Source: Prasinococcaceae sp. CCMP 1430 (taxonomy: Eukaryota; Plantae; Prasinodermophyta). From it: a DNA stretch of 64,000 bases. A model generated the notes under the pieces. The model did no database searches. It was given only the letters and a program-made list of their open reading frames with translations, and was not told the origin of the DNA. Shown one piece after another: positions 17,829 through 37,340 of the stretch (position 1 is the first letter of the stretch; each line of letters starts with the position of its first letter). The stretch is taken from the NCBI GenBank assembly GCA_013416795.1, contig RQSC01000029.1:291248-355247 (forward strand). The letters are read 5' to 3'. Made by a program: the position numbers and the translations under genes.

Positions 17829-17862
<34 letters not shown>

Positions 17863-18094
17863 GGGGGGGGGGGGGGGGGGTCAGCGAGGGTGGCGCATCG
17901 CGCGTTCGATCGCACGTGCCATGCGCAGGCAAGGGTGCGGCCACGCACGGGCGGGCGTGCTTTCGTGGACGTGAGAGCGCGAGCGGGCGTGCGTCGAAGA
18001 GACGCGGCATCGCACCTGCCCCCTGCTGCGACGGCGGTCCTGCGGGCCCGTTGGGTGGCCGCGCACGCCCCGGCGGCGGCACGGCGCCTGGCAT
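16613..18094 (-). CDS. Atypical SDR / NAD(P)-binding Rossmann protein (YeeZ-like, plant plastid family); 5' end uncertain, intron 18015-17800
   Basis: ILIVGPGELG dinucleotide-binding motif, YVVYCAPPS, FTSSSAVY, VVRLAGLY and LNLIHYDDAA. The phase-1 intron GTGCGA...CTCAG contains a CTGAC branch point. Confidence 0.8.
17830..17880. repeat. C31 run directly followed by G20 run (loop-less inverted homopolymer) inside an intron
   Basis: Read directly from the sequence. Confidence 0.9.
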
Positions 18095-18447
18095 CGGCGG
18101 GGGCGGCTTCCCGGCCGCGCCTGCGTGGGCATGGTCGTCGTCCTTCACCTTCCCCTGCCGCACCCGCCCCCTACCCCACACTCCCTGCCCCGCCCGCGGC
18201 GCGACGCGCTGTGGCGACCCACGCCAACCCGCGCGCGCCGCACACGCCGGGGGATTTGGTGCGTTTTGATATGCGTTTTGGTGCTCGCCAGTGGGTTTGC
18301 ATGAGCCTTGGGTTCTGGATAAGATGGTGAAGGTCGAGGCCGTTGGCGCGTGGGGCGCCGGCCTCGCCGCGCTTCGCGTCGAGCTCGGCGCGACGAGCTG
18401 GGCGCGCTGTTCGCGCGCGGGGGGGGGGGGGGGGGGGGGGGGGGGGG

Positions 18448-18465
18448 NNNNNNNNNNNNNNNNNN
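18448..18465. other. Assembly gap flanked by poly-G
   Basis: N-run between G tracts. Confidence 0.99.
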
Positions 18466-18643
18466 GGGGGGGGGGGTTGTCGCGAGACTCAAGGATGGCG
18501 AACGCTCGCCCGCGCGCTCGCTTGCTCACTCGCTCGGAGTCCTCACTACTGCAAAGAGATATTTATGTTTTCAATCATGCACCCACCGCGTGGGGTGGGT
18601 GCCGTGTTTTTGGGGCTCGCAGACTCATCACGTCTGGTGCGCC

Positions 18644-21204: not shown

Positions 21205-24200
21205 ATGATCGGATCGCATGGCCTCTCGGCGCCGTCGGGCGGCGGCGGCGGCGCGGAGCGCGAGCCGGGCGTGGGGGCCTCGGCCGTGGGCATCGACGTC
21301 AAGGTGATGAACGACGGGGTCGACCGGCTGGCACTGTCGGCGAGCGCCTTGCCCGCCGGCGCAGCAGCTCCTGACAGGGGAGACTGGGCGGTGGGCGTGC
21401 TCCATGGCAGCAGCGCGAGCGCGGCCGCGCGCGGCGCGCGCGGCACCCATGGCGGCGCCAGCGGCGGCGCTGAGGCGGCCAGCCCAGTGCTTGGTGAGGC
21501 GCCCGTCGCGACAGTGGACTTCGCCAGCGCCGCCGTGGAGGGGCGCGCGACGTCCACCGACAGCACACAGGACAGCGTGCTGCTGGGTTTCATGGCCATG
21601 CGAGCACGCCGACGTGCGGCGGCGACCGGTGGCGGAGCGCGCTCGGCGCACGGCGCGCTAGCCACCACCGAGCTCAGCGCGCTCGCCGCCGATGAGCTCC
21701 GCCTCCTCAAGCATGCGCACGGCGCGGAAACCGCCACTGCCGGTGAGATGGAGGTTGGACCCGAAGAGGACGAGCTTTCCACCCCCGCCGTCGACCGCGA
21801 GTGGGGCGATGCGCACATGTGGGGCGACAAGGAGACCATCGAGTCGGTGGTCGGCAGGCGAGCGCACGGCGTCGACCTGGGGCCCAAGCGCTTCCTCCCC
21901 GGCGTGAGCGGCTTGGACGTGACGGAGAGGTACACGCAGCACGAGAGGGAGGCCGTGCGCGCCGTTGGTGACCACATGCACAGCAAGGCGCGCGAGGGGC
22001 TGCTCAAGAATGTCGACGCGGAGCGGCGAGCGGCGCTGCGCGAGGCGGGCGTCGCGCGCTACGGTCTGCAGGCGAGCGAGCGCGACGAGGTGGTCGTCGG
22101 CGAGGCCGTTGGTGCAGACGACTTCGAGCTCCCCGAAGTTCCCATCGCGATCGCCACGGCGAAGCTCGCGGCGGCCAAAACTCGCAAGGGCACTTCCTTC
22201 GACGCCCACAAGCTGCCGCGCGTCGATGCGCGTGGCGACATCGACCGGGTAGTTGGCCAGGGCTACGCGGGCTTGGGGGCGGAGGGAGAGTGGGAGAGTG
22301 GCGCCGACGCGTACGCGACGCCCCCTGACGAGGCAAAGACCAGTCTGCTGCTGCGGCGCGCATCGCATTGGGCTGACATGTGGAAGCTGCCCGCGAAGGA
22401 GGCGGTGGACGCAGCGGAGCGCGCCGCGCAGCGGCGCCTCGGCGGGGGAGGCGACGGGCCGGGAGGGGTGGAGGAGGCGGCGGCGGCGCACCCCGCGTGG
22501 ACAGAGCAGCCGCCGGGCGTCGGCGCGAACGCGGGTGTGGCAGGGGTCGAAGCAATCCTCGATGCGCTCGACGTGGAGCGCGATGCGGCACTCGAGAGCG
22601 CCGCTGCCGCCGGTCGCACACCTGCCCGCACGCCGAACACGCCAGGCGCGCCGGGATCCGGCGGGAGCGCTCGCCACCACAGGCGTGGTGCTGTGGCACC
22701 TTTCCCAGAGGGCGTCCCTGGCACAACCAACACGGCGGTCATGGCACAGGCATTTCGCGCTCAGAGATTCATCCCAGGCGCCGGTGGTGGCATGCGCGTG
22801 CTCGCCAAGGCAACCAAGGCACGCTTCCCGCGACTCGGCACGCTGGGAGAGCATCACTTGGTGCTGCGCAACGCGCTGGTGGCCCTGCCCGGCGGGTCGG
22901 TCGCCGCACCCGGCGCGGGCCAGGTGGATGGTACTGCTGTAGAATACGTCGAGGGCGTCGCGGTGCAGAAGGGACCGCCGCCACATCTCGCTCCCTTCAT
23001 GTGGCCGCGCCGTGCGCAGCTGCCCATCGGCTGTCGAGTGGACCAGGTCAGCGTTGGAAACGACCACGTTGTTGCGCGCGTCTCGGGTTCGCGGTTGGAG
23101 CCGCCTCGCGAAGAATTCGCGAGCGCGAGTCGCGAGACACCCGCCGCGGGCCTCGGGAGCGCCGTTGATGGGGCTTCAGGTGCGCCTCCCAAGGAGGTTG
23201 CACCGCCTGGCCCCGACCACGGGCTTATGGTTGACCGAAGTGTAGGAATCTCGCACGCGCACGGGTCAGCGTTGTTTTCTTGGGGAGAGAGGTGCGACTG
23301 CGCATGCGTGCGCCCCGCCGCACGCGCGCGGGCGCGGCGGGCGGCCAGGTGCGTTAAGGTGCGTGCCGCAGCGGCTGCAGTGTCCGGCGCTGACAGGAGA
23401 AATGCGATAGGTACGACGGTCTCGTGGTGAGTATGGGGTCCGGGAGGCATGGGCAGACGGGGCAGCAGCACACACGCGACACGCACGCCCCTGAGCTTTT
23501 AGAAACACTCACAGAGGCGGACGTGCGTGCGTTGGACTGCGGCGACGAGCACACGTGCGTGGTGACTGCCACTGGAGACGTGGCGGCATTCGGCCGTGGC
23601 GACGGCCTGCGGTTGGGCACAGGCGAGGAACAGAGTTCTAGCGTTCCCCGCGTGGTCTTCTGGGTAGGGCAGGGTACTCACAAGATCAAGGCCGTGGCCG
23701 CAGGGGGTGCGCACACGCTCCTCCTCACCGAGGCGCAGAATGTGCTGGCGTTTGGCTCGAATGGCGATGGGCAGCTGGGCATTGGCACCACACGCGCCTC
23801 TGCCAAGCCTGTGGAGGTGCGGACGGTGCGCAGCTTGCGGGTGACTGCGATCGCGTGTGGCTCCCGTCACTCGTTGGCAATCACGAGGGAGGGGCTGCTC
23901 TATGCCTTCGGGAACAACGACGCAGGGCAGCTTGGGCTTGGCTCCGCCGGCGACGCCATGCTCTACCAGGCCGACCGCGAGTATGAAAGCGACGAAGAGG
24001 ACCACGAGGAGCTCGCGCGTCGGATTGCCGAGGACCTTGCGCGACATGAGCGTGACGCGCAGCGAGTGCTCAGCGCTGGAGATGACCTTGGCGACGAAGA
24101 CTACGAGGGGACAGACACCGACGCAGCTCTCCGTAGCCGGGTGACGGACGGCGGCAGCGAGGCCGGCGAGATGGGCGAGGGCCCATTCTGGCGGCCCGCG

Positions 24201-26110
24201 CCCTCCCAGAAACTCCCGTGCCGCGTGCGCCACCCAGAGTGGCGGGGTGGCGACAGCGGCACTGAGCAGTTTGTGAGCGAGTCTGCCGCAGCGGCATCTT
24301 CGGCCAGCCTCGCAATGGGAGACACGGGCGCTGCTGTGATGGCTGTATCCGCTGGCGAGATGCACTCGGTGGTGCTCACTTCGTCAGGCGCAGTGTATAC
24401 CTTCGGCGCCGGCGACCGCGGCCAGTTGGGTCATGGGGATGCCATGGATCGCCACTGGCCATGCTGCGTGGAACGCCTGAGCGGCGGGCGTGGTGGGCAG
24501 CGTGTGGTCATTCAGCAGGTGGCGGCAGGCGCCGCACACACCGTCGCTCTGTCGAAGCTCGGCCTGGTGTACACGTGGGGCGCCGGCGAGCTCGCGCAGC
24601 TTGCCAACGGCGTGCTCGATGACGTGCACCAACCCGAGGTCGTTCGCGCGCTAAGCACCGTGCGTGTCGGCCAAGTGGCAGCAGGCGGCGGCTGCACGGC
24701 CTTCGTGCTCCGGCACGACGGCTCGCTGTGGACGGCGGGCTCTACGGCGTACGGGCGGCCGGGAGAACGCAACCCGACGCGGCTGGCGGTGCTCATGCGC
24801 CGACAGCTCAACAGGCGAGACCAGAAGAAGGTGCTGGTGATGTTGAGCACTATTGACATGCTCACGCCTCACGAGATGCGCTTCACAGACCTAGAGCAGC
24901 AGACTATCCTCTATGGACCTTTCGGAGAGGAGGTGCTCGCGCACTTGCTCGACGCGCTGCTGCAGCGCATGCTCGCGCACCCCGTCTTCCTGCACATGCT
25001 GGTGAGGTTTGTCAAGAGCGTCGCGGACCACGCGTTGGGCATCTGCAAGTACTCGTTCCGAAGGCTGCTGGTGGATGCCATCGAGCACACCGGCGTGCAT
25101 CTGTTGAAGGAGCAGCGCGACGACATAGAGATCATCCGCGAGCGAAAGGCAAACATTTGCAAGCAAAACTCGCATGAAAACGGCGGCAGTGGAACCACCA
25201 CCTCCGCAGCCACGCCTAGCGCCAGCGTGATGGCATCCACGTCGCCAATGACGTACTTCGGCCACGTCCACGATAAGGACAGCTTCGAGCGCTACACTAG
25301 ATGGCGCATCCGCGCCCGCTCGCTTGGACGTTTCGTGCAGGAGGCCGCCCGCGCCCACATGCTCGACGGGACTGACATGGCGGACATCGAGGCAGCGTGC
25401 CCCGGCTCGCTGCACTCCCTGCACATCACCGACTCGGCAATGGCAGAGACGAAACTCGATCTCTTCCGCACCCTCGTTTGGCGCACAACGGCGGGCCAAG
25501 GCGGCGAGGGCCACAGTGGACGTAGCGGCGGGTCCCAGGTCACGGGTGCGCGCGGAGGCGCTGGAGCCAACGACGGCACTGCGGGTGCAACAGCGAGCTT
25601 GCTGTCCGGCACACGCGTGTACACACGCGCGTCGGAGGACACCGCCTATTCGGGCTTCGTTCCGGGCCTCGAGGGGTCCGAGGAGGGCATCGCCGAGGTG
25701 GAGAGCTGGAGGGCGCACCTCCAGCGGCGCGCAGTTGAGCGCGAGCAGCTCGTGGGGTTGCGCGGCCTGTCATCGCTCGCAGTCGAGCAGGCGGAGCGAG
25801 CGCAGCGCGAGCGTGTGGAGGCACTTAAGCGCGAGGCGGAGGCGTATGCGCCGGGGAAGACAGGCGCGCTGGGCACCGGCGCTGGCCCGCCGAGCGCGCA
25901 GGCGCCCAAGGTACATCCGCATGAGCAGGCACCTGAGGGTGCGGACGCGGTCACCGCACGGGGCGGCTTCAGGGAGGGCGCGCCGCCGGGGCCGAAGGTC
26001 GCAGTTCGCGGCGTTGGGACGATAGACACGGACGGCGCCATGAGGAGGCTGGCGGACGGGGCGAGGAGTATCGAACCGAGCATGTTGGCGGAGGTGCGCG
26101 CGCGCGCGCG

Positions 26111-26147
<37 letters not shown>

Positions 26148-26749
26148 GCCTGTCTGTGTGTGTGTGTGTATCCTACATGTACATAAATGCGAGAGGCTGA
26201 GCCGCACGCGCAAGTGCTTGCTCTCGCACCCCTGGTGCGTGCTGCGTGCGTGCGCCATTGGCTGACCCCACCGTGCGCACGCGCCGCGCCGTGCCTGCGC
26301 CGCAGATGCCGCTCGTTGAGAGGCCGAAGACGGGGCCCAGCACGCCCCTCAACGCGTTGGTCGACATTAGCCGCGAGGAGGCCGCCTGGGTCGACCAGAT
26401 GGCAAAGTTGGGATCCATCGCCGAGGGGGACGAGCGCCTGCACACGGACGGCAGCGGCATCCACGAGTGTACTGCTCCGGCCCCGCGCGAGCGCAGCGGC
26501 AGTGAGCAGTCCGTCCCGCCGATGAGCAACATCTTCGCGCCCATGCAAGCGGGCACCACCAAGGGCGCGGGTGCCGCGCACGCGCCCGCGGCCAGCTCCA
26601 GCGCCAGCGAAGATATCAACATCACGTCCGAGCGCGCCGATTTCCTGGCCGAGTGCGCGCGCATGCGCCAGGTGGCCGCCAAGTACGCCGAGCCGCCGCC
26701 GAGGCCCCTGCGGGGAGTGGAGAACGGCGTGAGGCCAGGGCGGAACTAG
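21205..26749 (+). CDS. Large RCC1-repeat protein with a downstream MIF4G-like helical domain. Exons approximately 21205-about 23290, 23397-26093, 26306-26749; first donor uncertain
   Basis: Several RCC1 repeats (CGDEHT, AGGAHT...FGSNGDGQLG, CGSRHS...FGNNDAGQLG, AGEMHS...FGAGDRGQLG, AGAAHT). The intron 26094-26305 is GT-AG and contains a (TCTG)n/(TG)n microsatellite. Confidence 0.75.
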
Positions 26750-26910
26750 CTTTTGCCGTCACGGCATCGCTAGCCGCGGAGGATCGCAGTAATGCAGGTG
26801 CACAGTTGTACGCGCGGGCGGTGGCACGCTGCGCGCGCATGCGCGTATGTGTCTGTGCCCGCGCGCGCACGCGCGTGTGTGCGTTCGCCCCTCGCCTCGC
26901 GCGATGCGCG

Positions 26911-27843
26911 CTATCGGGCGCCGGCGTCGCCGTCGCCAGTGGCTTCGACGAGCTCCGAGTCTAGCAGCGAGAGCACCGCCATGTGGCCCGGCGCGTGTGT
27001 AATCGCCAACGGCACGGCGTCGCCGGCCGCCTCGAGCGCGCACTGCGTGCTCACGCCGCACGCCCAGAAGACGGGTACCTCGCCCTCCCTGACGTCCACC
27101 GCGTTGCCAAAGTCCGGCTCGTTCATGGGCGTGGCGATGCCCAGCGCGGCGACGCCGTCCTCGCCCCACGCGAGCGGCGCGCCGTGGGCACCCGGGTAGC
27201 GGCCGGTGATCTCGCACACGCGCGGGATGTCTGCCGGCGCGTACGGCCGCATAGACACCACGAGGTTGCCGCGGAAGGGTCCGGCGGGCTCGTTGGGCAC
27301 CGCTGTGCGGTACATGGGCACGTTGCGTCCGAGCTCGACGTGGCGTGGCACGAGGCCGGCCTCGGCGAGCGCGGCCTCCCACGAAAACGAGCAACCGAGC
27401 GCAAAGGCGACCATGTCGCCGCTGGCAAGCTCGGCAACGTCCGTGGCCTCGCGTTCGGGCTCTCCGTCTTTCCACACGATGTAGCGAGGCAGGTCGGTGA
27501 AGACGTCGCAGCCGGGCGCAGCGAGCGGAAGCGAGCGACACCCAGGCGAGCCCACATCGAGCAGAGGCGCCTGGCGAGGGTTGCGCAGGGCGAAGCATAG
27601 GAAATCGAACGCGTGCGCCGCGGGGAGCACGACCAAGTTTGCCTGCGCGAGACCTGGCGCGGCTCCGGGCGTCGGTGCGTCAAAGCGGCCCTCACGACAT
27701 CCGCGCCAGAACACCGCAGCCTGCGCGCGGCAGGCGCCGCCACCGGCGCCGGCGCCGGCGTCATCGTGAGTGCTGGTTGGCGCGACGAACGTTGGTGGGA
27801 GACCCGTGCGCAGCGCGCGCGGAAGTGGCTGCTGCGGCGGCAT
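26911..27843 (-). CDS. DUF1445/UPF0317 putative hydro-lyase (D-glutamate cyclase-related), intronless
   Basis: QANLVVLP, DFLCFALRNP, TDLPRY, LGCSFSWE, NVPMYRT, LVVSMRP, HGAP and PVFWACGV motifs. The start codon is uncertain. Confidence 0.85.
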   Translation of the reverse strand: MPPQQPLPRALRTGLPPTFVAPTSTHDDAGAGAGGGACRAQAAVFWRGCREGRFDAPTPGAAPGLAQANLVVLPAAHAFDFLCFALRNPRQAPLLDVGSPGCRSLPLAAPGCDVFTDLPRYIVWKDGEPEREATDVAELASGDMVAFALGCSFSWEAALAEAGLVPRHVELGRNVPMYRTAVPNEPAGPFRGNLVVSMRPYAPADIPRVCEITGRYPGAHGAPLAWGEDGVAALGIATPMNEPDFGNAVDVREGEVPVFWACGVSTQCALEAAGDAVPLAITHAPGHMAVLSLLDSELVEATGDGDAGAR

Positions 27844-27962
27844 CGGCGGCTCGCCAGCGAGGTGAAGCGCGCCGCGCGGCGTGTGGCGCACTGCGTGTGC
27901 GCACGCATACACAGGCAACCTCTCGTGCACGTGTGAACGCCACAGTGCGCGCACGCGCGCAC

Positions 27963-28985
27963 ATGGAGGCGGCGGCAGGATGTGGCAGCGGAAGTGATGA
28001 GTGGGAGGTCGCGGGAGGCCGCCGGCGCGCCCGCACGCGGCGCGGTGGCGGTGGTGACGGCGACGTTGACGGCGGTGACGGGCTGCGGCGCTTGCTCGCG
28101 CGCGGCGGTGCACGGCTGCGCGCGGACCTTGCGGCCGTTGCCGCGGGCGCGCGGCCGGCGATGCTGCTCGACTATGCTGGAGCGCCGACGGCGGCGGTCG
28201 CAGTAGCCCTCGATGCCGCGTGTGCTCCCCATGGCCCACGTGTGCGCGCTTGGCTGCTTGCTGACGGCTTTCTGTACGTCGTCAACTCGACAACCGTGCG
28301 TGCTATGGGCGCGTGCGCATCAGGGGCTCACCCGCTGCCTAGACTCATCGTGCTCGACGGGCGCAGCGACGCTACCGATGAGGACAATGGCGCAGGCGAC
28401 GGCAATGGCGGCAGCAGCGGCGGTGGTCGAGTCGGTGGCATCGGTGCCGCGCCTCGGTGGGGCACAGAGCACGAGCAGGCCGCGCTGCGTGCACTCGTCT
28501 GCGAGGTGTGCATTGCGGGCGAGGAGGCGGCGGGCGAGGGCGAGGGCAAGGATGAGGGCGCCTTTGGTGAGACGCCGCGGTCAGTGGTCGACCTGCGCGT
28601 GCGCGCGGCGAGCGCATGTGCTCGCGCAGCGCTCGCGCTGCCGTGCCTCAGCGGCGCACTGCTTGGCTACCCGGTGACGTACGCGTTCTCGCCGACCGAA
28701 GCAGGCGCAGCCGCCGCGGGCAGGGCGCTTGGCGGCAGTGGCAGCGCGCTTACGCTCTTCGAGGCGCACGCGAGGAGTGAAAGCGCGCGCAGCAGCACCT
28801 TCGCCGCGCACGAGACACCGGAGCCCATCGCGGCCTTCACCGTGCCCTCGGCGCTCTGCCCGCTCGGCGCGCGCGAGGGATGGGCGCGCGCTTGGGGCGA
28901 GCGCCTCGGAGGCTTCAACGGCCGCCTGTGGGAGCGCGCGGTGCTCGTCGCCGCTGCTGCGCCGTCGCAGCGGCTCGTGCTCTGA
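27963..28985 (+). CDS. DUF4504 / C1orf74-like protein of unknown function
   Basis: DLAAVAAGARPAMLLDY, LSGALLGYPVTY and FTVP motifs recalled for this family. It starts about 120 bp from the divergent DUF1445 gene. Confidence 0.6.
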   Translation: MEAAAGCGSGSDEWEVAGGRRRARTRRGGGGDGDVDGGDGLRRLLARGGARLRADLAAVAAGARPAMLLDYAGAPTAAVAVALDAACAPHGPRVRAWLLADGFLYVVNSTTVRAMGACASGAHPLPRLIVLDGRSDATDEDNGAGDGNGGSSGGGRVGGIGAAPRWGTEHEQAALRALVCEVCIAGEEAAGEGEGKDEGAFGETPRSVVDLRVRAASACARAALALPCLSGALLGYPVTYAFSPTEAGAAAAGRALGGSGSALTLFEAHARSESARSSTFAAHETPEPIAAFTVPSALCPLGAREGWARAWGERLGGFNGRLWERAVLVAAAAPSQRLVL

Positions 28986-29341
28986 GGGAGGGGAAGGGCA
29001 GAGGAGGGGGGCGTGCCTCAGGCTTGGCCCTGCTGCCACGCTCCTCGCGTTGTAGCATGTGTGCTGTACTGTGCGATTTTGGTAAACGATTTCTGTCAAC
29101 GACGTGCGCAAGCACGTACACACGCACGGTTCTCGCGTGCACAAGCACGAACGCGACTGCGCGAGCGAGCGCGCGCTCGAGGCGCTGCTTTCCAAGGGGC
29201 GGCGACACCCCCAGCGCCGGCAGGAGCGCCATCAACTGCTTCTCGACAGAAGGTGATTTCAAACAGGCATTATACATGGGAGTAGAAGGGAGGGAAAGGG
29301 AGGGGAGGGGGAAAAGGGACGGGGTCCACCGCCCCCGCCCA

Positions 29342-32300
29342 TCAGCGCGCCAGCCTGGCGTGCTCGCTCTTGAGCTCGTACACGGTGGGGAACGCGGCGT
29401 TGGCGACGTCCGCCGGCTGCCCGGCGTAGTACGATGCCATGAATCTGGGCGTCGACAGGCGCTTGTTCCCGCGCCAGTCTGGCATTCGAAGCGGCACCAG
29501 CCTGTGCGGAGTGCCGACCCTGCCCTGGAGACTGTCGGCCGTGATGGAGCCGAGATCGGACACCGTGTCGGTCCACTCGGAGCTGCCGTCGAGCACGAGG
29601 AGGGAGCCGTCGATATTAAAATTCGCGCGCGCGGTGTCGCCATGCGTCTGGACGTCCACCGCGACGTGCGCGAGCGACACGGCCGCGCTGAGGTCGTACG
29701 CGATCTTGCCGATGACGCTCTCGACGCCCCCCATGCGCATCGACATGACCTGGCAGATCTTCTTGCCGTCAGCGTCCAGGCGTGCGTCAAACCTGAAGAA
29801 ATTGTCACCGTCCTGGACGTCAAAGACAACACCCAGCGAGCTGTTGGGCGTGAGCACGCCCTCGATCGCGATCTCTGTGGGAAAGTAGCCAGCCTCCCAG
29901 CTGCTCTCGGCGTCGCTGCCCATGAGGAAGGTAGGAGTGTACGATGTGCTGTCGCACAGCGAAGGGTCGCTCTGGTTGAGATTGAGCTCCAGGAGAGAGG
30001 CGGGGGCCTCTATGCCTTCGCCGGAGATGAGCGACCACGTCAGGTCCTGGCCACTCTCGCTCAGCGTCTTGGAGACGTCGTGAGGGCCGAACCAGAGCGG
30101 CCGCCTGCTGTCCTCCTCAGGCAGGTCGCTGAGCGTCGAGAAGTCGATGCTGTCGACGAATGTGTCGTTGGACAAGGCAAAGGAGAGCGCAGCCTCCACG
30201 CGCGCCACCCTCTCAGAGGTCTCTTGCAGCCAATCGCGCACCGAGCGCGCGCTTCCGTCGTCCTCGTTGACCACGATGACGTCGTCGACGGTGAGCGTGC
30301 CATCATAGCCAAGGGCCCCTGCTGCGCTCGCATCGTTGCGCGTCATGGCCATGTGGTGCTTGAAGACGGTGCTCCTCCAGCCGAAGGCGGTGGTGCCATC
30401 TTCGCCGCCCTCGGGGCTGATCCTCTGCGCGGTATCGACGCCGCACACCAGCGGGCACACGTTGGGCTTCCCCGGGCTCGCGTTTTCGTGGCCGCTCCAC
30501 ACGTAGCTGTCGCCGCAGCGCTGCAGGCTGCCCATCGACTCGTCGTACGAATCAGGGTAGTCGAAGTTGTAGGAGACGTAGTGGGCGTCCTCGTGGTCGA
30601 CGTCGGGGTGGCGCAGGTAGTACGTCTCGCCGCCTGAGTCCAGACCGCTCGGCAGAGGGCGATCCACGTCGGCGAGCTCGCAATCCGAATATTGCGAGTC
30701 CTTGTCCATCTCGTCGCACCCGAACCAGATGCCCCCCGCTCCAAGGATAGCGTCGCGGAACGTCAACGGCGCGCCATCGTCCTCAAAGCCGCCGTCGTAG
30801 TCGTACTGGTCATACAGCTTCCAGCCCCTGAGGTTGCACGGCACGTCGCCAATGTTGATAATCTCCAACCAGTCCTCAGGATCGCCGCGCGGGTGCACTT
30901 CGTTGATCTTGAGGGCGTCTACTTCGCACACCAAAGGCACGTAGTCGTCGGGGACCTCTATGACGCCTGTGTCTCCCACGCCCACAGCTCGTGGGGGGGT
31001 GCCAAAGAGATCGTCCAGGCTGAAGCCAGGAGGAAGGTCATCGAGCCAGCCGCCGGGCGGAGGCGGACTCAGCAGGTCGTAATCACTGTACTCTTGGTCG
31101 TGGTACTCACTGTACTCTTGGTAGTTGTACTCACTGTACTCTTGGTAGTTGTAATCACTGTAGTTTTGGTCGTGGTACTCACTGTACTCTTGGTAGTTGT
31201 AATCACTGTAATTTTGGTCGTGGTAATCACCGTACCCGTAGTCGTAGTAATCACCGTAACCATGGAGGTGGTAATCACTGTACTCTTGGTCGTGGTACTC
31301 ACTGTACTCTTGGTAGTTGTAATCACTGTAATTTTGGTCGTGGTACTCACTGTACTCTTGGTAGTTGTAATCACTGTACTCTTGGTCGTGGTACTCACTG
31401 TACTCTTGGTAGTCGTAATCACTGTAATTTTGGTCGTGGTAATCACTGTACTCTTGGTAGTTGTAATCACTGTAATTTTGGTCGTGGTACTCACCGTACC
31501 CGTAGTCGTAGTAATCACCGTAACCATGGAGGTGGTAATCACTGTACTCTTGGTCGTGGTACTCACTGTACTCTTGGTAGTTGTAATCACTGTAATTTTG
31601 GTCGTGGTAATCACTGTACTCTTGGTAGTTGTAATCACTGTAATTTTGGTCGTGGTACTCACTGTACTCTTGGTAGTTGTAATCACTGTAATTTTGGTCG
31701 TGGTAATCACTGTACTCTTGGTAGTTGTAATCACTGTAATTTTGGTCGTGGTACTCACCGTACCCGTAGTCGTAGTAATCACCGTAACCATGGAGGTGGT
31801 AATCACTGTACTCTTGGTCGTGGTCCGGCGAGGGCGCGTCCGGCGAGGGCGCGTCCGGCGGCGGCGAATCAGGCGGCGCGGAAGGTGCGCTCGGCACGTC
31901 CGTCTGGCCGAACAAGTTCCACCCCCAGCAGAGGATTTCGACGTCGGTCTGCGCGACGCCGCACGTGTGGTACGCTCCGGCGCTCACGGAGGACCACGTG
32001 CCCACGCCGCTGGGAACAGTTGTCTGGCCGTTGATATTGTATCCCCAGCAGTGCAGCGCGGAGTCCACCTGCGCGATGCCGCACGTGTGCCGAAGTCCGG
32101 CGCTCACCGAGGACCACGCGCCCATGCCGCTTGGAACGGTTGTCTGGTCGTACTCGTCATATCCCCAGCAGTGCAGCACGCCGTCCGCCTGCGCGATGCC
32201 GCACGTGTGGTAACCTCCGACGCTCACGGAGGACCACGCGCCCACGCCGCTTGGCACGTCCGTCTGGCCGTAGTCGCCATATCCCCAGCAGTGCATCGCG

Positions 32301-35300
32301 CCGTCGCCTTGCGCGATCCCACACGTGTGAAGTCCTCCGGCGCTCACGGAGGACCACGCGCTCACACCGCTCGGCATGGTAGTCCGGTTGTAGGTGCTGT
32401 GTCCCCAGCAGTGCAGCGCGCCATTGCTCTGCGCGATGCCGCACGTGTGCTCATGCCCGGCGCTCACTGAGGACCACGCGCTCACATTGCTCGGCACGTC
32501 CGTCTGGCCATGCCCTGTTGCTCCCCAGCAGTGCAGCGTGCCATCGTCCTTCGCGATGCCGCACGTGTGCTCATGTCCGGTGCTCACGGAAGACCACGCG
32601 CTCACATGGCTAGACACGTTCGTGGGCCTGCGGTACTCGTCGTCGCCGTCGTATTCAGAATCGATGTAGGAGGTATCTCCCCAACAGCGCAGCTCGCCGT
32701 CGGCGTGCGCGAGGTCGCACGTGTGGAACAGTCCGGCGCTCACAGAGTGGGGTGGGCTCGGCGGTGGGCTCGGCAGTGGGCTCGGCGGTGGGCTTGGCGG
32801 CGGAGACGGCGGTGGGCTTGGAGGGGAGCTCGGTGTGTGCGGGCTCGGATCGTAAAAACCCCACACCATCACGCCGCCAGGAATGTTCGTCTGGCCTTGC
32901 TCGTCGGCTCCCCAGCAGTGCAGCGCGCCGTCGGCCTGCGCAACGCCGCACGTGTGGTAGGAACCGGCACCCACGGAGGACCAAGCACTCACGACCACAG
33001 GCACGTCCGTCTGACCATATTCATTCCATCCCCAGCAGTGCAGCGCGCCGTCGGCCAGCGCGACGCCGCACGTGTGGTAGGAGCCGGTGCTCACGGAGGA
33101 CCACACACTCACGACCACAGGGACGTCCGTCTGACCATATGCATTCCATCCCCAGCAGTGCAGCACGCCGTCGGCCTGCGCGACGCCGCACGTGTGGTAG
33201 GAGCCGGTGCTCACGGAGGCCCACGCACTCACAACGACCGGAACGTCAGTCTCGCCATTGCCATTATATCCCCAGCAGTGCAGTGCACCGTCGGCCTGCG
33301 CGATGCCGCACGTGTGGTAGGAACCGGCGCTCACGAAGGACCACGCACTCACATTGACCGGCACGTCCGTCTGGCCATCGCTGTTAGATCCCCAGCAGTG
33401 CAGCGCGCCGTCCGCCTGGCGCTACGGCGTGCACACCATCCTCGGCCGCGAGTGGGAGGACCACGCACTCACAACCACCGGAACGTCCGTCTGGCCAACG
33501 CCGTTATATCCCCAGCAGTGCAGCGCGCCGTCGGCCTGCGCGATGCCGCACGTGTGGTAGACACCGGCGCTCGCGGAGGACCACGCGCTCACAACCACCG
33601 GCACATCCGTCTGGCCCTCGCCGTTCGATCCCCAGCAGTGCAGCGCGCCGTCGGCTCGCGCGATGCCGCACGTGTGGTACTGTCCCGTGGCCCCGGGGAA
33701 AGCCTCGCCAGCGGCGGCCGACGGGTCCTCCGGCGAGTACGGTGAAGACGGAGTAGGGCTCGGTGTGTGCGGGCTCGGATCGTAAAAACCCCACACCATC
33801 ACGCCGCTAGGAACGTTCGTCTGGCCTTGCTCGTCGGCTCCCCAGCAGTGCAGCGCGCCGTCGGCCTGCGCGACGCCGCATGTATGGTAGAAACCGGCAC
33901 CCACGGAGGACCACGCACTCACGACCACAGGCACGTCCGTCTGTGCAGCGCGCCGTCGGCCTGCGCGACGCCGCATGTATGGTAGAAACCGGCACCCACG
34001 GAGGACCAAGCACTCACGACCACAGGCACGTCCGTCCGACCATCGCTGTCGACTCCCCAGCAGTGCAGGGCGTCGTCGGCCTGCGCGATGCCGCACGTGT
34101 GCTGGCTTCCAGCGCTCACGGAGGACCACGCACTCACGACGACCGGCACGTCCGTCCGACCATTGTCGTTCGATCCCCAGCAGTGCAGCGCGTCGTCGGC
34201 CTGCGCGATGCCGCACGTGTGATACCATCCGGCGCTCACGGACGACCACGCACTCACGACCACAGGCACGTCCGTCTGACCACCGCCATTAAATCCCCAG
34301 CAGTGCAGTACACCGTCGGCCTGCGCGATGCCGCACGTGTGGAAGGAGCCGGCGCTCACGAAGGACCACGCACTCACATTGACCGGCGCGTCCGTCTGGC
34401 CATCGCTGTTAGATCCCCAGCAGTGCAGCGCGCCGTCCGCCTGCGCGATGCCGCACGTGTGGTAGGAGCCGGCGCTCACGGAGGACCACGCACTCACAAC
34501 CACCGGAACGTCCGTCTGGCCAACGCCGTTTGTTCGTCTGGCCTTGCTCGTCGGCTCCCCAGCAGTGCAGCGCGTCGTCGGCCTGCGCGACGCCGCATGT
34601 ATGGTAGAAACCGGCACCCACGGAGGACCACGCACTCACGACCACAGGCACGTCCGTCTGGCCACCGCCATTAAATCCCCAGCAGTACAGCGCGTCGTCG
34701 GCCTGCGCGATGCCGCACGTGTGGTGGACTCCAGCGCTCACGGAGGACCATGCACTCACGACGACCGGTACGTCCGTCTGGCCATCGCCGTTAGATCCCC
34801 AGCAATGCAGCACGCCGTCGGCCTGCGCAACGCCGCACGTGTGGTAGGAGCCGGCGCTCACAGAGGACCACGCACTCACAACCACCGGCACGTCCGTCTG
34901 ACCATCTACATTCCATCCCCAGCAGTGCAGCGCGCCGTCCGCCTGCGCGATACCGCACGTGTGGTACTCTCCGGCGCTCACGGAGGACCACGCACCTACG
35001 CTGCTCGGCACGTGCGTCTGGCCCTCGCCGTTCGATCCCCAGCAGTGCAGCGCGCCGTCGGCCTGCGCGATGCCGCACGTGTGGTAGGAGCCGGCGCTCA
35101 CGGAGGACCACGCACTCACATTGACCGGCACGTCCGTCTGGCCCTCTATGCTGCGTCCCCAGCAGTGCAGCGCGCCATCGTCATGCGCGATGCCGCATGT
35201 GTGCTCACGTCCTGCGCCAACGGAGGACCACGCACTCACATTGACCGGCACGTCCGTCTGGCCGTACACGTTGTCTCCCCAGCAGTGCAGCGCGCCGTCC

Positions 35301-37340
35301 GCCTGCGCGATGCCGCACGTGTGCGTGTATCCTGCGCCCCCGGGAAAAGCCTCGCCAGCGGCGGCCGACGGGTCCTCCGGCGCGTACGGGCTCGGCGGTA
35401 GAGATGGCGGTGGGCTCGGCAAAGAATTTGGCGGGGATGGGCTCGGCGGTGCGCTCGGCGGCGGCGGGCTCGGCGGCGGGCTCGGCGGCGGGCTCGGGGG
35501 GAGGCTCGGCGGCGGGCTCCGAACAACGCTACTCGCGCGAGCTCTGCGAGGTGTGCATCCGCCGCCGCTGCCGCTGCCACTGCCGCCGCCGCTGCCGCCG
35601 CCGCGCGTTTGCGTGCACTGCGCCGCATCCCCCCGGCAGTTTCCCTTTTTTCTTTACGTTTGATCTTTGGATTAGCAAAGCGCGTTGAGTGCAAAGTGAT
35701 ACGGAATTGTGGACAGAAAAAATACGAACATTTTAATCGCACTGTAATCGCACCCTTCCAAGAAGAACTACTCACTGAACAGAGTGATGATGGTAGTAGT
35801 TTTCACAGAGTACTGGTCAAGACTACGAGGGCATTTTGGGCGCCCTCCTAGGCGCCTGATTGCGCGCCCGCTCTCTCTCTCTCTCTCTGCTCTCTCTCTC
35901 TCTTCCTCTCTCTCTCTCTCTCTCTGTCGTAAGTTTAGCCACGCATCCTCAGCAGTATGCGCAAGGCACCGGATCGCAGAGCGCCTCTCTGCATGGCCAC
36001 GTTGGCAGCTTACGACGTACGACCGCGCGACGCCATCCTTTGTCGGCCAATCAATACTCATACAGCAATTGCCCCTCCACGAAGCGGCGCGGCGCAGTCG
36101 CGACCAGCAGGCTGCCATCGCGCGCGAGGTCGACTTAGAACGGCGGCGGCGCGTCCGGCGGCGGCGCGTCCGGCGACGGCGGCCACGCCGCGTTAGGAAA
36201 GCCCATGGGAAAGCCCATTGGCGAGTCATGGGAAAGAAGGCCCCGCGTTGGCGGGCTCGGCTTGAAAAAGTCCCACGCGATCACGTCACTCGGAACGTCT
36301 GTCTGACCATCGCCGTTGTGTCCCCAGCAGTGCATCGTTCCGCCGGCCTGCGCGACGCCGCACGTGTGATCTTCGCCGGCGCTCGCGGAGGACCACGCGC
36401 TTACATCACTCGGCACGCCCGTCTGACCATCGCCGTTGTATCCCCAGCAGTGCAACGATCCGTCGGCCTGCGCGACGCCGCAATTGTGATACGATCCGGC
36501 ACTCACGGAGGACCACGCACTCACGCCACTCGGCACATCCGTCTGACCGTTGGCATTGTATCCCCAGCAGTACATCGCGCCATCGGCCTGCGCGATACCG
36601 CATGTGTGCTCCCCTCCGGTGCTCACGGAGGACCACGCGTTCACGCCGCTCGGCACGTCCGTCTGACCGTAGTTGTCGTCTCCCCAGCAGTGCATCGCGC
36701 CGTCGCCTCGCGCGATGCCGCACGTGTGATACCATCCGGCGCTCACGGAGGACCATTCGCCCACGCCGCCGGGAACAGTTGTCTGGCCGTTGCTATTCCG
36801 TCCCCAGCAATGCATCGCGCCGTCGTCCCGCGCGATGCCGCACGTGTAATATCCTCCGCTGCTCACGGAGGCCCACGCGCTCACATGGCTCGGCACGGTA
36901 GTCTGACCATCGCCGTTATATCCCCAGCAGTGCATCGCGCCGTCCGCCTGCGCAACGCCACACGTGTGGTATTTCCCGGCGCTCGCGGAGGACCACGCGC
37001 CCACGCCCCTCGGCACGTCCGTCTGACCGTAGTTGTTGTCTCCCCAGCAGTGCAGCGCGCCGTCGTCTTGCGCGATGCCACACGTGTGGAAACTTCCGGC
37101 GCTCGCGAAAAAGGAGGAGGAGGAGGAGGAGGAAGAGGAGGGGGCATGGGGGGCACGAAGGCTGTCCACAGCATGGCGGAGGCCGCCGCTGCGCGCGTCG
37201 CGCGATGAGGAGCCCTCAGCGGCGGTGGCGCCGTACGGTGCGGCGCACAGCGCGAGCAGCAGCGCGAGCAGCAGCGCGAGCAGCGGTGCTGCGAAGGGCA
37301 CGGCCAGCCATTGTATGCAAGCCCGAGGCCGGCAGGCCAT
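29342..37340 (-). CDS. Giant secreted/surface protein locus: signal peptide, up to five 7-blade blocks of 40-aa RCC1/BLIP-II-like repeats, SPPP linkers, Tyr-rich repeat, lamin-tail (LTD)-like domain, C-terminal beta-rich domain. Reading frame interrupted; may be one gene or two tandem genes
   Basis: Signal peptide MACRPR...LLALLLALLLALCAA at 37340. Repeats HTCGIAQADGALHCWG at 120-bp period. LTD-like LKINEV...DWLEIIN...GWKL...SPGKPN. Interruptions: stop at 36135 then an AT-rich spacer or intron, frameshifts at 34530/1 and 33943/4, and a TAG at 33422 inside an anomalous 36-mer. Confidence 0.75.
31078..31822 (-). repeat. Coding mosaic minisatellite with 24-bp period encoding [HD|NY]Q[EN]YS[DE]Y, in three higher-order units each marked by HLHGYGDYYDYGYG
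   Basis: Read directly from the DNA and from the ORF 29342-33364 translation. Confidence 0.95.
31900..37110 (-). repeat. About 33-34 copies of a 120-bp coding repeat arranged in blocks (7, 7, about 5.5, 7, 7)
   Basis: The CCCCAGCA (CWG) anchor recurs every 120 bp, for example 32041/32161/32281/32401/32521, 32911-33631, 34557-35277 and 36321-37041. Confidence 0.95.
35871..35925. repeat. (CT)n microsatellite
   Basis: Read directly from the sequence. Confidence 0.95.

What the first reader, a model, noticed from the sequence alone, without database searches (positions are those of the whole stretch)
33419..33454. 36-nt segment replaced by its exact un-reversed complement inside a repeat blade
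The expected blade sequence is present intact in a twin copy at 34444-34479 (CGCGATGCCGCACGTGTGGTAGGAGCCGGCGCTCAC) with matching flanks. At 33419-33454 it instead reads GCGCTACGGCGTGCACACCATCCTCGGCCGCGAGTG, a base-for-base complement without reversal over 36/36 nt (exactly 12 codons). It introduces the only stop (TAG, 33422) between ORF 33422-34249 and the same-frame ORF 29342-33364. An inversion would give a reverse complement, and no known replication or repair mechanism gives a same-orientation complement. An in-silico error or edit is therefore most likely. If it were present in raw reads it would be extraordinary.
Basis: seen in the sequence. Interest (0 to 1): 0.8.

Follow-up and report, generated by a model that had tools for sequence, protein, structure and literature searches.

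The report
Complemented 36-base patch: assembly artefact
Thirty-six bases inside a repeat gene of a marine alga's draft genome are written as their letter-by-letter complement without reversal; four independent sequencing runs do not contain this, so it is almost certainly a software error in the sequence file, not biology.

Summary
Window 33419-33454 is the exact, un-reversed complement (36/36) of the matching segment in two sister repeat copies. It sits in register in a 120-nt (40-aa) RCC1-type blade array on the minus strand. It covers exactly 12 codons and creates the only stop between 33942 and 29342. Chance cannot give this: p is about 5e-21, and shuffles reach only 16-18 nt.

The patch is not in independent data. 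Contigs from two DNA and two RNA runs of this organism have depth 0 over 33423-33443. The same runs give perfect-match contigs for the blades on both sides. One contig's loose end shows the expected, un-complemented letters.

No inversion or template switch explains it, because no reverse-complement or reversed donor exists in the window.

The scan has noted about 20 similar patches elsewhere in this genome (36-116 nt, and one 900-bp reversed-only block). None of those notes has been checked.

My reading is a half-finished reverse-complement step in building or handling the assembly. I could not reach the public record, so I cannot say whether the error is in the deposited assembly or was added later.

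Verdict: not a real feature. Biological interest is low. It is a useful data-quality warning for this genome.

The parts
33419..33454 (-). 36-nt patch written as the plain (un-reversed) complement of the expected blade sequence. It covers 12 codons and contains the TAG stop at 33424-33422 on the minus strand.
   Evidence: Zero depth over it in four runs.
34444..34479 (-). Twin copy carrying the expected sequence. It lies in a 237-nt block (34294-34530) that is about 98% identical to 33269-33505.
35066..35101 (-). Second blade with the identical expected 36-mer.
32909..33679 (-). Array of 120-nt (40-aa) RCC1_2 blades that holds the patch in register.
   Evidence: period 120, 6.4 copies; PF13540 RCC1_2, PF25390.
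29342..33364 (-). Downstream ORF of the same frame: blades, proline-rich linker, a second propeller, Tyr/Asp-rich repeats, a Lamin-tail-like stretch and a unique C-terminal domain.
   Evidence: Independent environmental contigs L001 and L006 match 21227-31434 at 98.8-99.0%.
33455..33942 (-). Upstream in-frame coding part (a blade, a Pro/Ser linker and two and a half blades). It would join the downstream ORF if the patch read normally.

Best explanation
The patch is an error of sequence handling, not a state of the DNA. A short piece that had to be reverse-complemented to fit the consensus was only reversed, which leaves it as the plain complement of the true sequence in place. The true sequence here is a normal blade segment, as in the sister copies, and the gene is not interrupted at this point. 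Shown here: the exact plain-complement relation, the register, the stop, and the absence from independent runs. Inferred: which step made the error (consensus building, patching or polishing of the draft assembly), and that the other patches noted in this genome share the cause.
For: The match is 36/36 plain complement, in register with 33 normal blades, with p about 5e-21. Depth is 0 over 33423-33443 in X1 and X2 (DNA) and in X10 and X16 (RNA), against flanking depths of tens to thousands. Zero-mismatch contigs cover 33190-33317, 33531-33652 and 33627-33728 in X1, and 33178-33315 and 33531-33655 in X10. A loose end before 33455 in X10 shows the last 11 letters of the expected sequence. No sequence in the window matches the reversed or reverse-complemented form, so there is no donor for a biological copy. 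The window is a gapped draft with N runs of 1-569 nt. The scan's first readers noted about 20 patches of the same kind on other pieces of this genome. These notes are unchecked leads.
Against: All four runs are held only as assembler contigs. These are fragmented in this repeat (no piece spans the stretch) and drop rare variants, so absence is strong but not absolute. The loose end could come from the twin copy. I could not see the public record or the reads the assembly was built from, so the step that made the error is not identified. The patch covers exactly 12 codons in frame, which has about a 1 in 9 chance for a blind error.
Confidence: 0.62

Rival explanations
1. The public assembly is correct here. 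The patch was introduced after download, by file corruption, a processing bug, or a deliberate in-silico edit such as a control spiked into the scanned sequence.
For: The sequence and read evidence is the same as for the main reading. The patch covers exactly 12 codons in frame, as a designed edit might. Many patches of assorted lengths are reported in this one genome.
Against: Other notes describe clusters: four 55-56-nt tracts within 1.6 kb, two in one gene, and recurring lengths of 55-56 nt. That looks more like a process tied to particular reads or regions than like scattered edits. Those notes are unchecked. Nothing here tests this rival directly.
Confidence: 0.33
2. The patch is really present in the DNA of the sequenced strain. 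It would be a same-orientation complement substitution made by an unknown process, such as copying of a strand in parallel orientation.
For: Only that the letters stand in the window, and that the original reads could not be examined.
Against: No known polymerase or repair pathway copies a template in parallel orientation (established knowledge). Four runs that hold the flanking blades at 100% identity have depth 0 over the patch. It would inactivate a blade and truncate the protein.
Confidence: 0.01
3. A biological inversion or template-switch event copied the patch from the opposite strand of a nearby repeat.
For: Tandem repeats favour template switching, and such events replace short tracts (established knowledge).
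Against: Such events give a reverse complement. The patch is not the reverse complement of any blade. No position in the window matches the reversed or reverse-complemented form at 25/36 or better. The expected 36-mer is not mirror-symmetric, so an inversion cannot mimic a plain complement.
Confidence: 0.01

Closest known systems
Orientation errors in sequence handling (a piece reversed but not complemented, or complemented but not reversed)
   Same: It yields an exact plain complement or an exact mirror of the true sequence, with sharp boundaries and no biological donor. It is absent from independent reads.
   Different: Such slips are usually seen for whole entries or primers (my own knowledge). 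Here it affects a 36-nt tract inside a consensus. A phrase search of the paper library found no description of such patches in assemblies.
Short inversions and template-switch mutations at replication forks
   Same: A short tract is replaced by sequence derived from the complementary strand, within repeats.
   Different: Those give a reverse complement. This tract is complemented without reversal, and no reverse-complement donor exists.
Mirror repeats (H-DNA forming tracts)
   Same: They involve a reversed, not complemented, sequence relation.
   Different: Natural mirror repeats are short and purine- or pyrimidine-rich. In this window the only long ones are simple GTCT repeats. The 36-mer here is complex coding sequence.
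RCC1_2 / RCC1-like beta-propeller repeat proteins (the host gene)
   Same: 40-aa blades match Pfam PF13540 and PF25390.
   Different: This concerns the gene, not the anomaly. The architecture with Pro-rich linkers, Tyr/Asp repeats and a Lamin-tail-like stretch was noted separately by the scan (s1-386644).

Membership tests
In-silico orientation artefact (half-done reverse complement) | The segment equals the exact plain complement (or exact reverse) of the sequence expected at that position. | tested here: met
   36/36 against two sister copies, in register with the 120-nt array.
In-silico orientation artefact (half-done reverse complement) | Absent from independent sequencing data that contain the flanks. 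| tested here: met
   Depth is 0 over 33423-33443 in four runs, with zero-mismatch contigs on both sides. This is contig-level evidence only.
In-silico orientation artefact (half-done reverse complement) | Present in the deposited assembly and traceable to a read or patch placed in the wrong orientation. | not testable with these tools
   No tool reached the public record or its reads. The metagenome, genome and viral scans were empty.
In-silico orientation artefact (half-done reverse complement) | Recurs elsewhere in the same assembly. | not tested
   About 20 first-reader notes describe such patches, but only this window was readable. No second patch was found in this window, and none in the 10 kb compared with independent contigs.
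Inversion / template-switch mutation | The tract is the reverse complement of the ancestral or a nearby sequence. | tested here: not met
   There are no matches of 25/36 or better to the reverse-complement or reversed form anywhere in the window.
RCC1_2 repeat propeller gene (host) | Repeated blades match Pfam RCC1_2 above the curated cut-off. | tested here: met
   PF13540 scores 63-186 bits against a cut-off of 22 in all four ORF pieces.

The most novel reading that the evidence does not exclude
The 36-nt same-orientation complement really exists in the alga's DNA, together with the other patches noted in this genome. That would point to an unknown process that writes short tracts in parallel-strand orientation.
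Probability: 0.01. Interest if true: 0.95.

Novelty: not a real feature. Interest (0 to 1): 0.08.

Why it matters
As biology it does not matter, because the gene is most likely intact at this point. As data quality it matters. Core genes (beta-tubulin, pyruvate kinase) and large repeat families would be affected, which would mislead gene models, pseudogene calls and variant calls. Such tracts keep G+C content and length, so ordinary quality checks do not see them.

Tried and rejected
1. I looked for an independent contig across the site. Exact-flank patterns with 36 free bases found nothing in metagenome contigs, genome contigs or viral contigs.

2. I looked for a public protein across the site. 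A search with the unique C-terminal region gave only one distant hit. A search with the 162 aa just upstream of the patch gave only a 54% relative.

3. I tried to reach the site from the neighbouring DUF1445 (D-Glu cyclase) gene through environmental contigs.
- L001, L002 and L006 match the window at 98.7-99.0%, but none reaches past 31434: L002 stops at 29393, and L001 and L006 end at 31122 and 31434 in the Tyr-rich repeat.
- L003-L005 belong to a relative about 96% identical, with fewer blades and no orthologous blade.
- The cluster of that protein has no named or NCBI member, so the organism is inferred only.

4. I scanned the window for further patches.
- Self-comparison found none beyond simple repeats.
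- Comparison with L001 over 9.9 kb found none.
- A Markov test of reading-direction asymmetry did not even recover the known patch, so it has no power.

5. A literature phrase search for such patches gave no relevant paper. A search on the alga's assembly quality gave nothing on this point.

6. I rejected chance, inversion, template switch and mirror-symmetric sequence.

Full report
**What is in the sequence**

Window 33419-33454 reads as the letter-by-letter complement, in the same direction, of 34444-34479 (36/36). It is also the complement of 35066-35101. The surrounding block 33260-33505 is otherwise almost identical to 34285-34530, with five single differences. The bases directly beside the patch agree with the twin, so the patch is exactly 36 nt.

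Across the window, 33 repeat units carry this segment in normal form at a regular 120-nt spacing. The unit at 33419 is the only one that matches the plain complement. Nothing matches the reversed or the reverse-complemented form.

The chance probability is about 5e-21. Shuffled windows give plain-complement matches of at most 16-18 nt. The real window gives nothing longer than 19 nt outside simple repeats and this patch.

**The gene around it**

The repeats are 40-aa blades on the minus strand. Their consensus is roughly VSAWSSVSAGxYHTCGIAQADGALHCWGxNxxGQTDVP. They match Pfam RCC1_2 (PF13540) and the RCC1-like propeller domain. Going downstream, the gene continues through:
- a proline-rich linker;
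- a second propeller;
- Tyr/Asp-rich repeats (31079-31824);
- a weak Lamin-tail match;
- a unique C-terminal domain ending at 29342.

The patch begins on a codon boundary and covers 12 codons. It reads HSRPRMVCTP*R where the sister blades read VSAGSYHTCGIA. Its TAG is the only stop in that frame between 33942 and 29342.

Above that the blades are in another frame (see 'in passing').

**The organism**

The window is 67% G+C and has N runs of 1 to 569 nt, so it is a gapped draft. The runs that hold it are two coded organisms plus marine metatranscriptomes. A neighbouring gene has its nearest named relatives in haptophyte algae (Prymnesium 55%, Calcidiscus 53%). Tara Oceans contigs match the window at 98.7-99.0%. 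I infer a coccolithophore of the Emiliania/Gephyrocapsa group. This was not confirmed by a named record.

**Independent data**

I laid the Logan contigs of four runs from different studies on 33150-33750 at a lenient 85% threshold. The runs were two DNA (X1, X2) and two RNA (X10, X16).

- The bin 33423-33443 has depth 0 in all four runs.
- The bins on either side have depths from tens to tens of thousands.
- The same allele as the window is present. Zero-mismatch contigs cover 33190-33317, 33531-33652 and 33627-33728 in X1, and 33178-33315 and 33531-33655 in X10.
- A contig in X10 that aligns from 33455 onward carries 11 unaligned letters before it. These are the last 11 letters of the expected, un-complemented segment.

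Some limits apply. These are assembler contigs, heavily fragmented in this repeat, and no piece spans the stretch. Contigs drop rare variants. The loose end could stem from the twin copy. The result is therefore strong but not final.

**Attempts to see the locus in another assembly**

All attempts failed for technical reasons.
- Pattern scans with 36 free bases found nothing.
- Protein searches found no protein across the site.
- Of the environmental contigs reached from the neighbouring gene, L002 stops at 29393 and L001 and L006 break in the Tyr-rich repeat at 31122-31434; L003-L005 belong to a 96% relative with fewer blades.

Where comparison is possible (21227-31434), the window agrees with independent contigs and shows no further patch.

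**Explanation**

A plain complement is the reverse of the opposite strand. An inversion or a template switch gives a reverse complement, and no such donor exists. No known polymerase copies in parallel orientation.

A piece that maps to the minus strand and is reversed but not complemented becomes exactly the plain complement of the reference in place. If it is complemented but not reversed, it becomes a mirror copy.

The scan's first readers have noted about 20 tracts of both kinds on other pieces of this genome. The reported lengths are 36-37, 45, 55-56 (several, some clustered), 70, 95 and 116 nt, plus a 900-bp reversed-only block. I could not read those pieces, so these notes are leads, not evidence. 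If they hold, they point to a systematic fault.

I commit to a half-finished reverse-complement step in consensus building, patching or polishing of the draft (0.62). A later corruption or a deliberate edit of the file is the main rival (0.33), and I cannot separate the two without the public record. A real DNA state gets 0.01, and so does inversion or template switching.

**Comparison with known things**

This is the familiar class of orientation slips in sequence handling, here at the unusual scale of a short tract within a consensus. Exact-phrase searches of the paper library returned no paper that uses those phrases. It is not a member of the inversion or template-switch class, because the defining reverse-complement relation was tested and not met.

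**Verdict**

This is not a real feature. Biological interest is low (0.08).

**In passing**

- The 717-nt segment 33814-34530, which contains the twin copy, lies between two copies of a 129-nt block (33814-33942 and 34531-34660, 128/130 identical).
- Its interior (33943-34530) is read one base out of frame with both sides.
- It starts with a 95-nt tandem duplication (33848-33942 and 33943-34037, 93/95 identical).
- This looks like a mis-joined or doubly assembled repeat, possibly the other allele of 33269-33505.
- A run of 31 C followed by a G run at 17830, and a 29-G run that abuts an N gap at 18419, also look like read-end artefacts.

Noticed in passing
window 33814-34660: A 717-nt segment (33814-34530) holding the twin copy lies between two near-identical 129-nt blocks (33814-33942 and 34531-34660, 128/130). 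Its interior, 33943-34530, is read one base out of frame with both sides. It begins with a 95-nt tandem duplication (33848-33942 and 33943-34037, 93/95). It looks like a mis-joined or doubly assembled repeat, perhaps the second allele of 33269-33505, rather than a real frameshifted gene.
   Followed up: partly
window 17830-17880 and 18419-18470: There is a run of 31 C directly followed by a G run. About 600 nt further on, a run of 29 G abuts an 18-N gap with more G after it. These are probably read-end or tailing artefacts in the draft.
   Followed up: no
other pieces of the same genome (scan notes s1-377758, s1-370951, s1-389843, s1-389856, s1-377767, s1-393019, s1-370966, s1-386608, s1-381916 and others): About 20 first-reader notes describe tracts complemented without reversal, or reversed without complementing. 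Lengths are 36-116 nt, plus one of 900 bp, and some lie in beta-tubulin and pyruvate kinase. All are unchecked. Together they suggest a genome-wide fault in this sequence file.
   Followed up: no
L003:87-3332 (ENA metagenome contig) versus window 29342-35500: A relative about 96% identical carries the same gene as a complete 1081-aa ORF. It has fewer blades, and its part downstream of the propellers is about 730 nt shorter, roughly the length of the Tyr/Asp repeat array. The number of propeller blades and repeats in this gene therefore varies between close lineages, or is inflated in the window's assembly.
   Followed up: partly
window 31079-31824: A Tyr/Asp/Gln-rich coding repeat has nested periods of 48 and 264 nt (97% identical copies). 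Every short-read metagenome contig of the near-identical strain (L001, L006) ends here.
   Followed up: no
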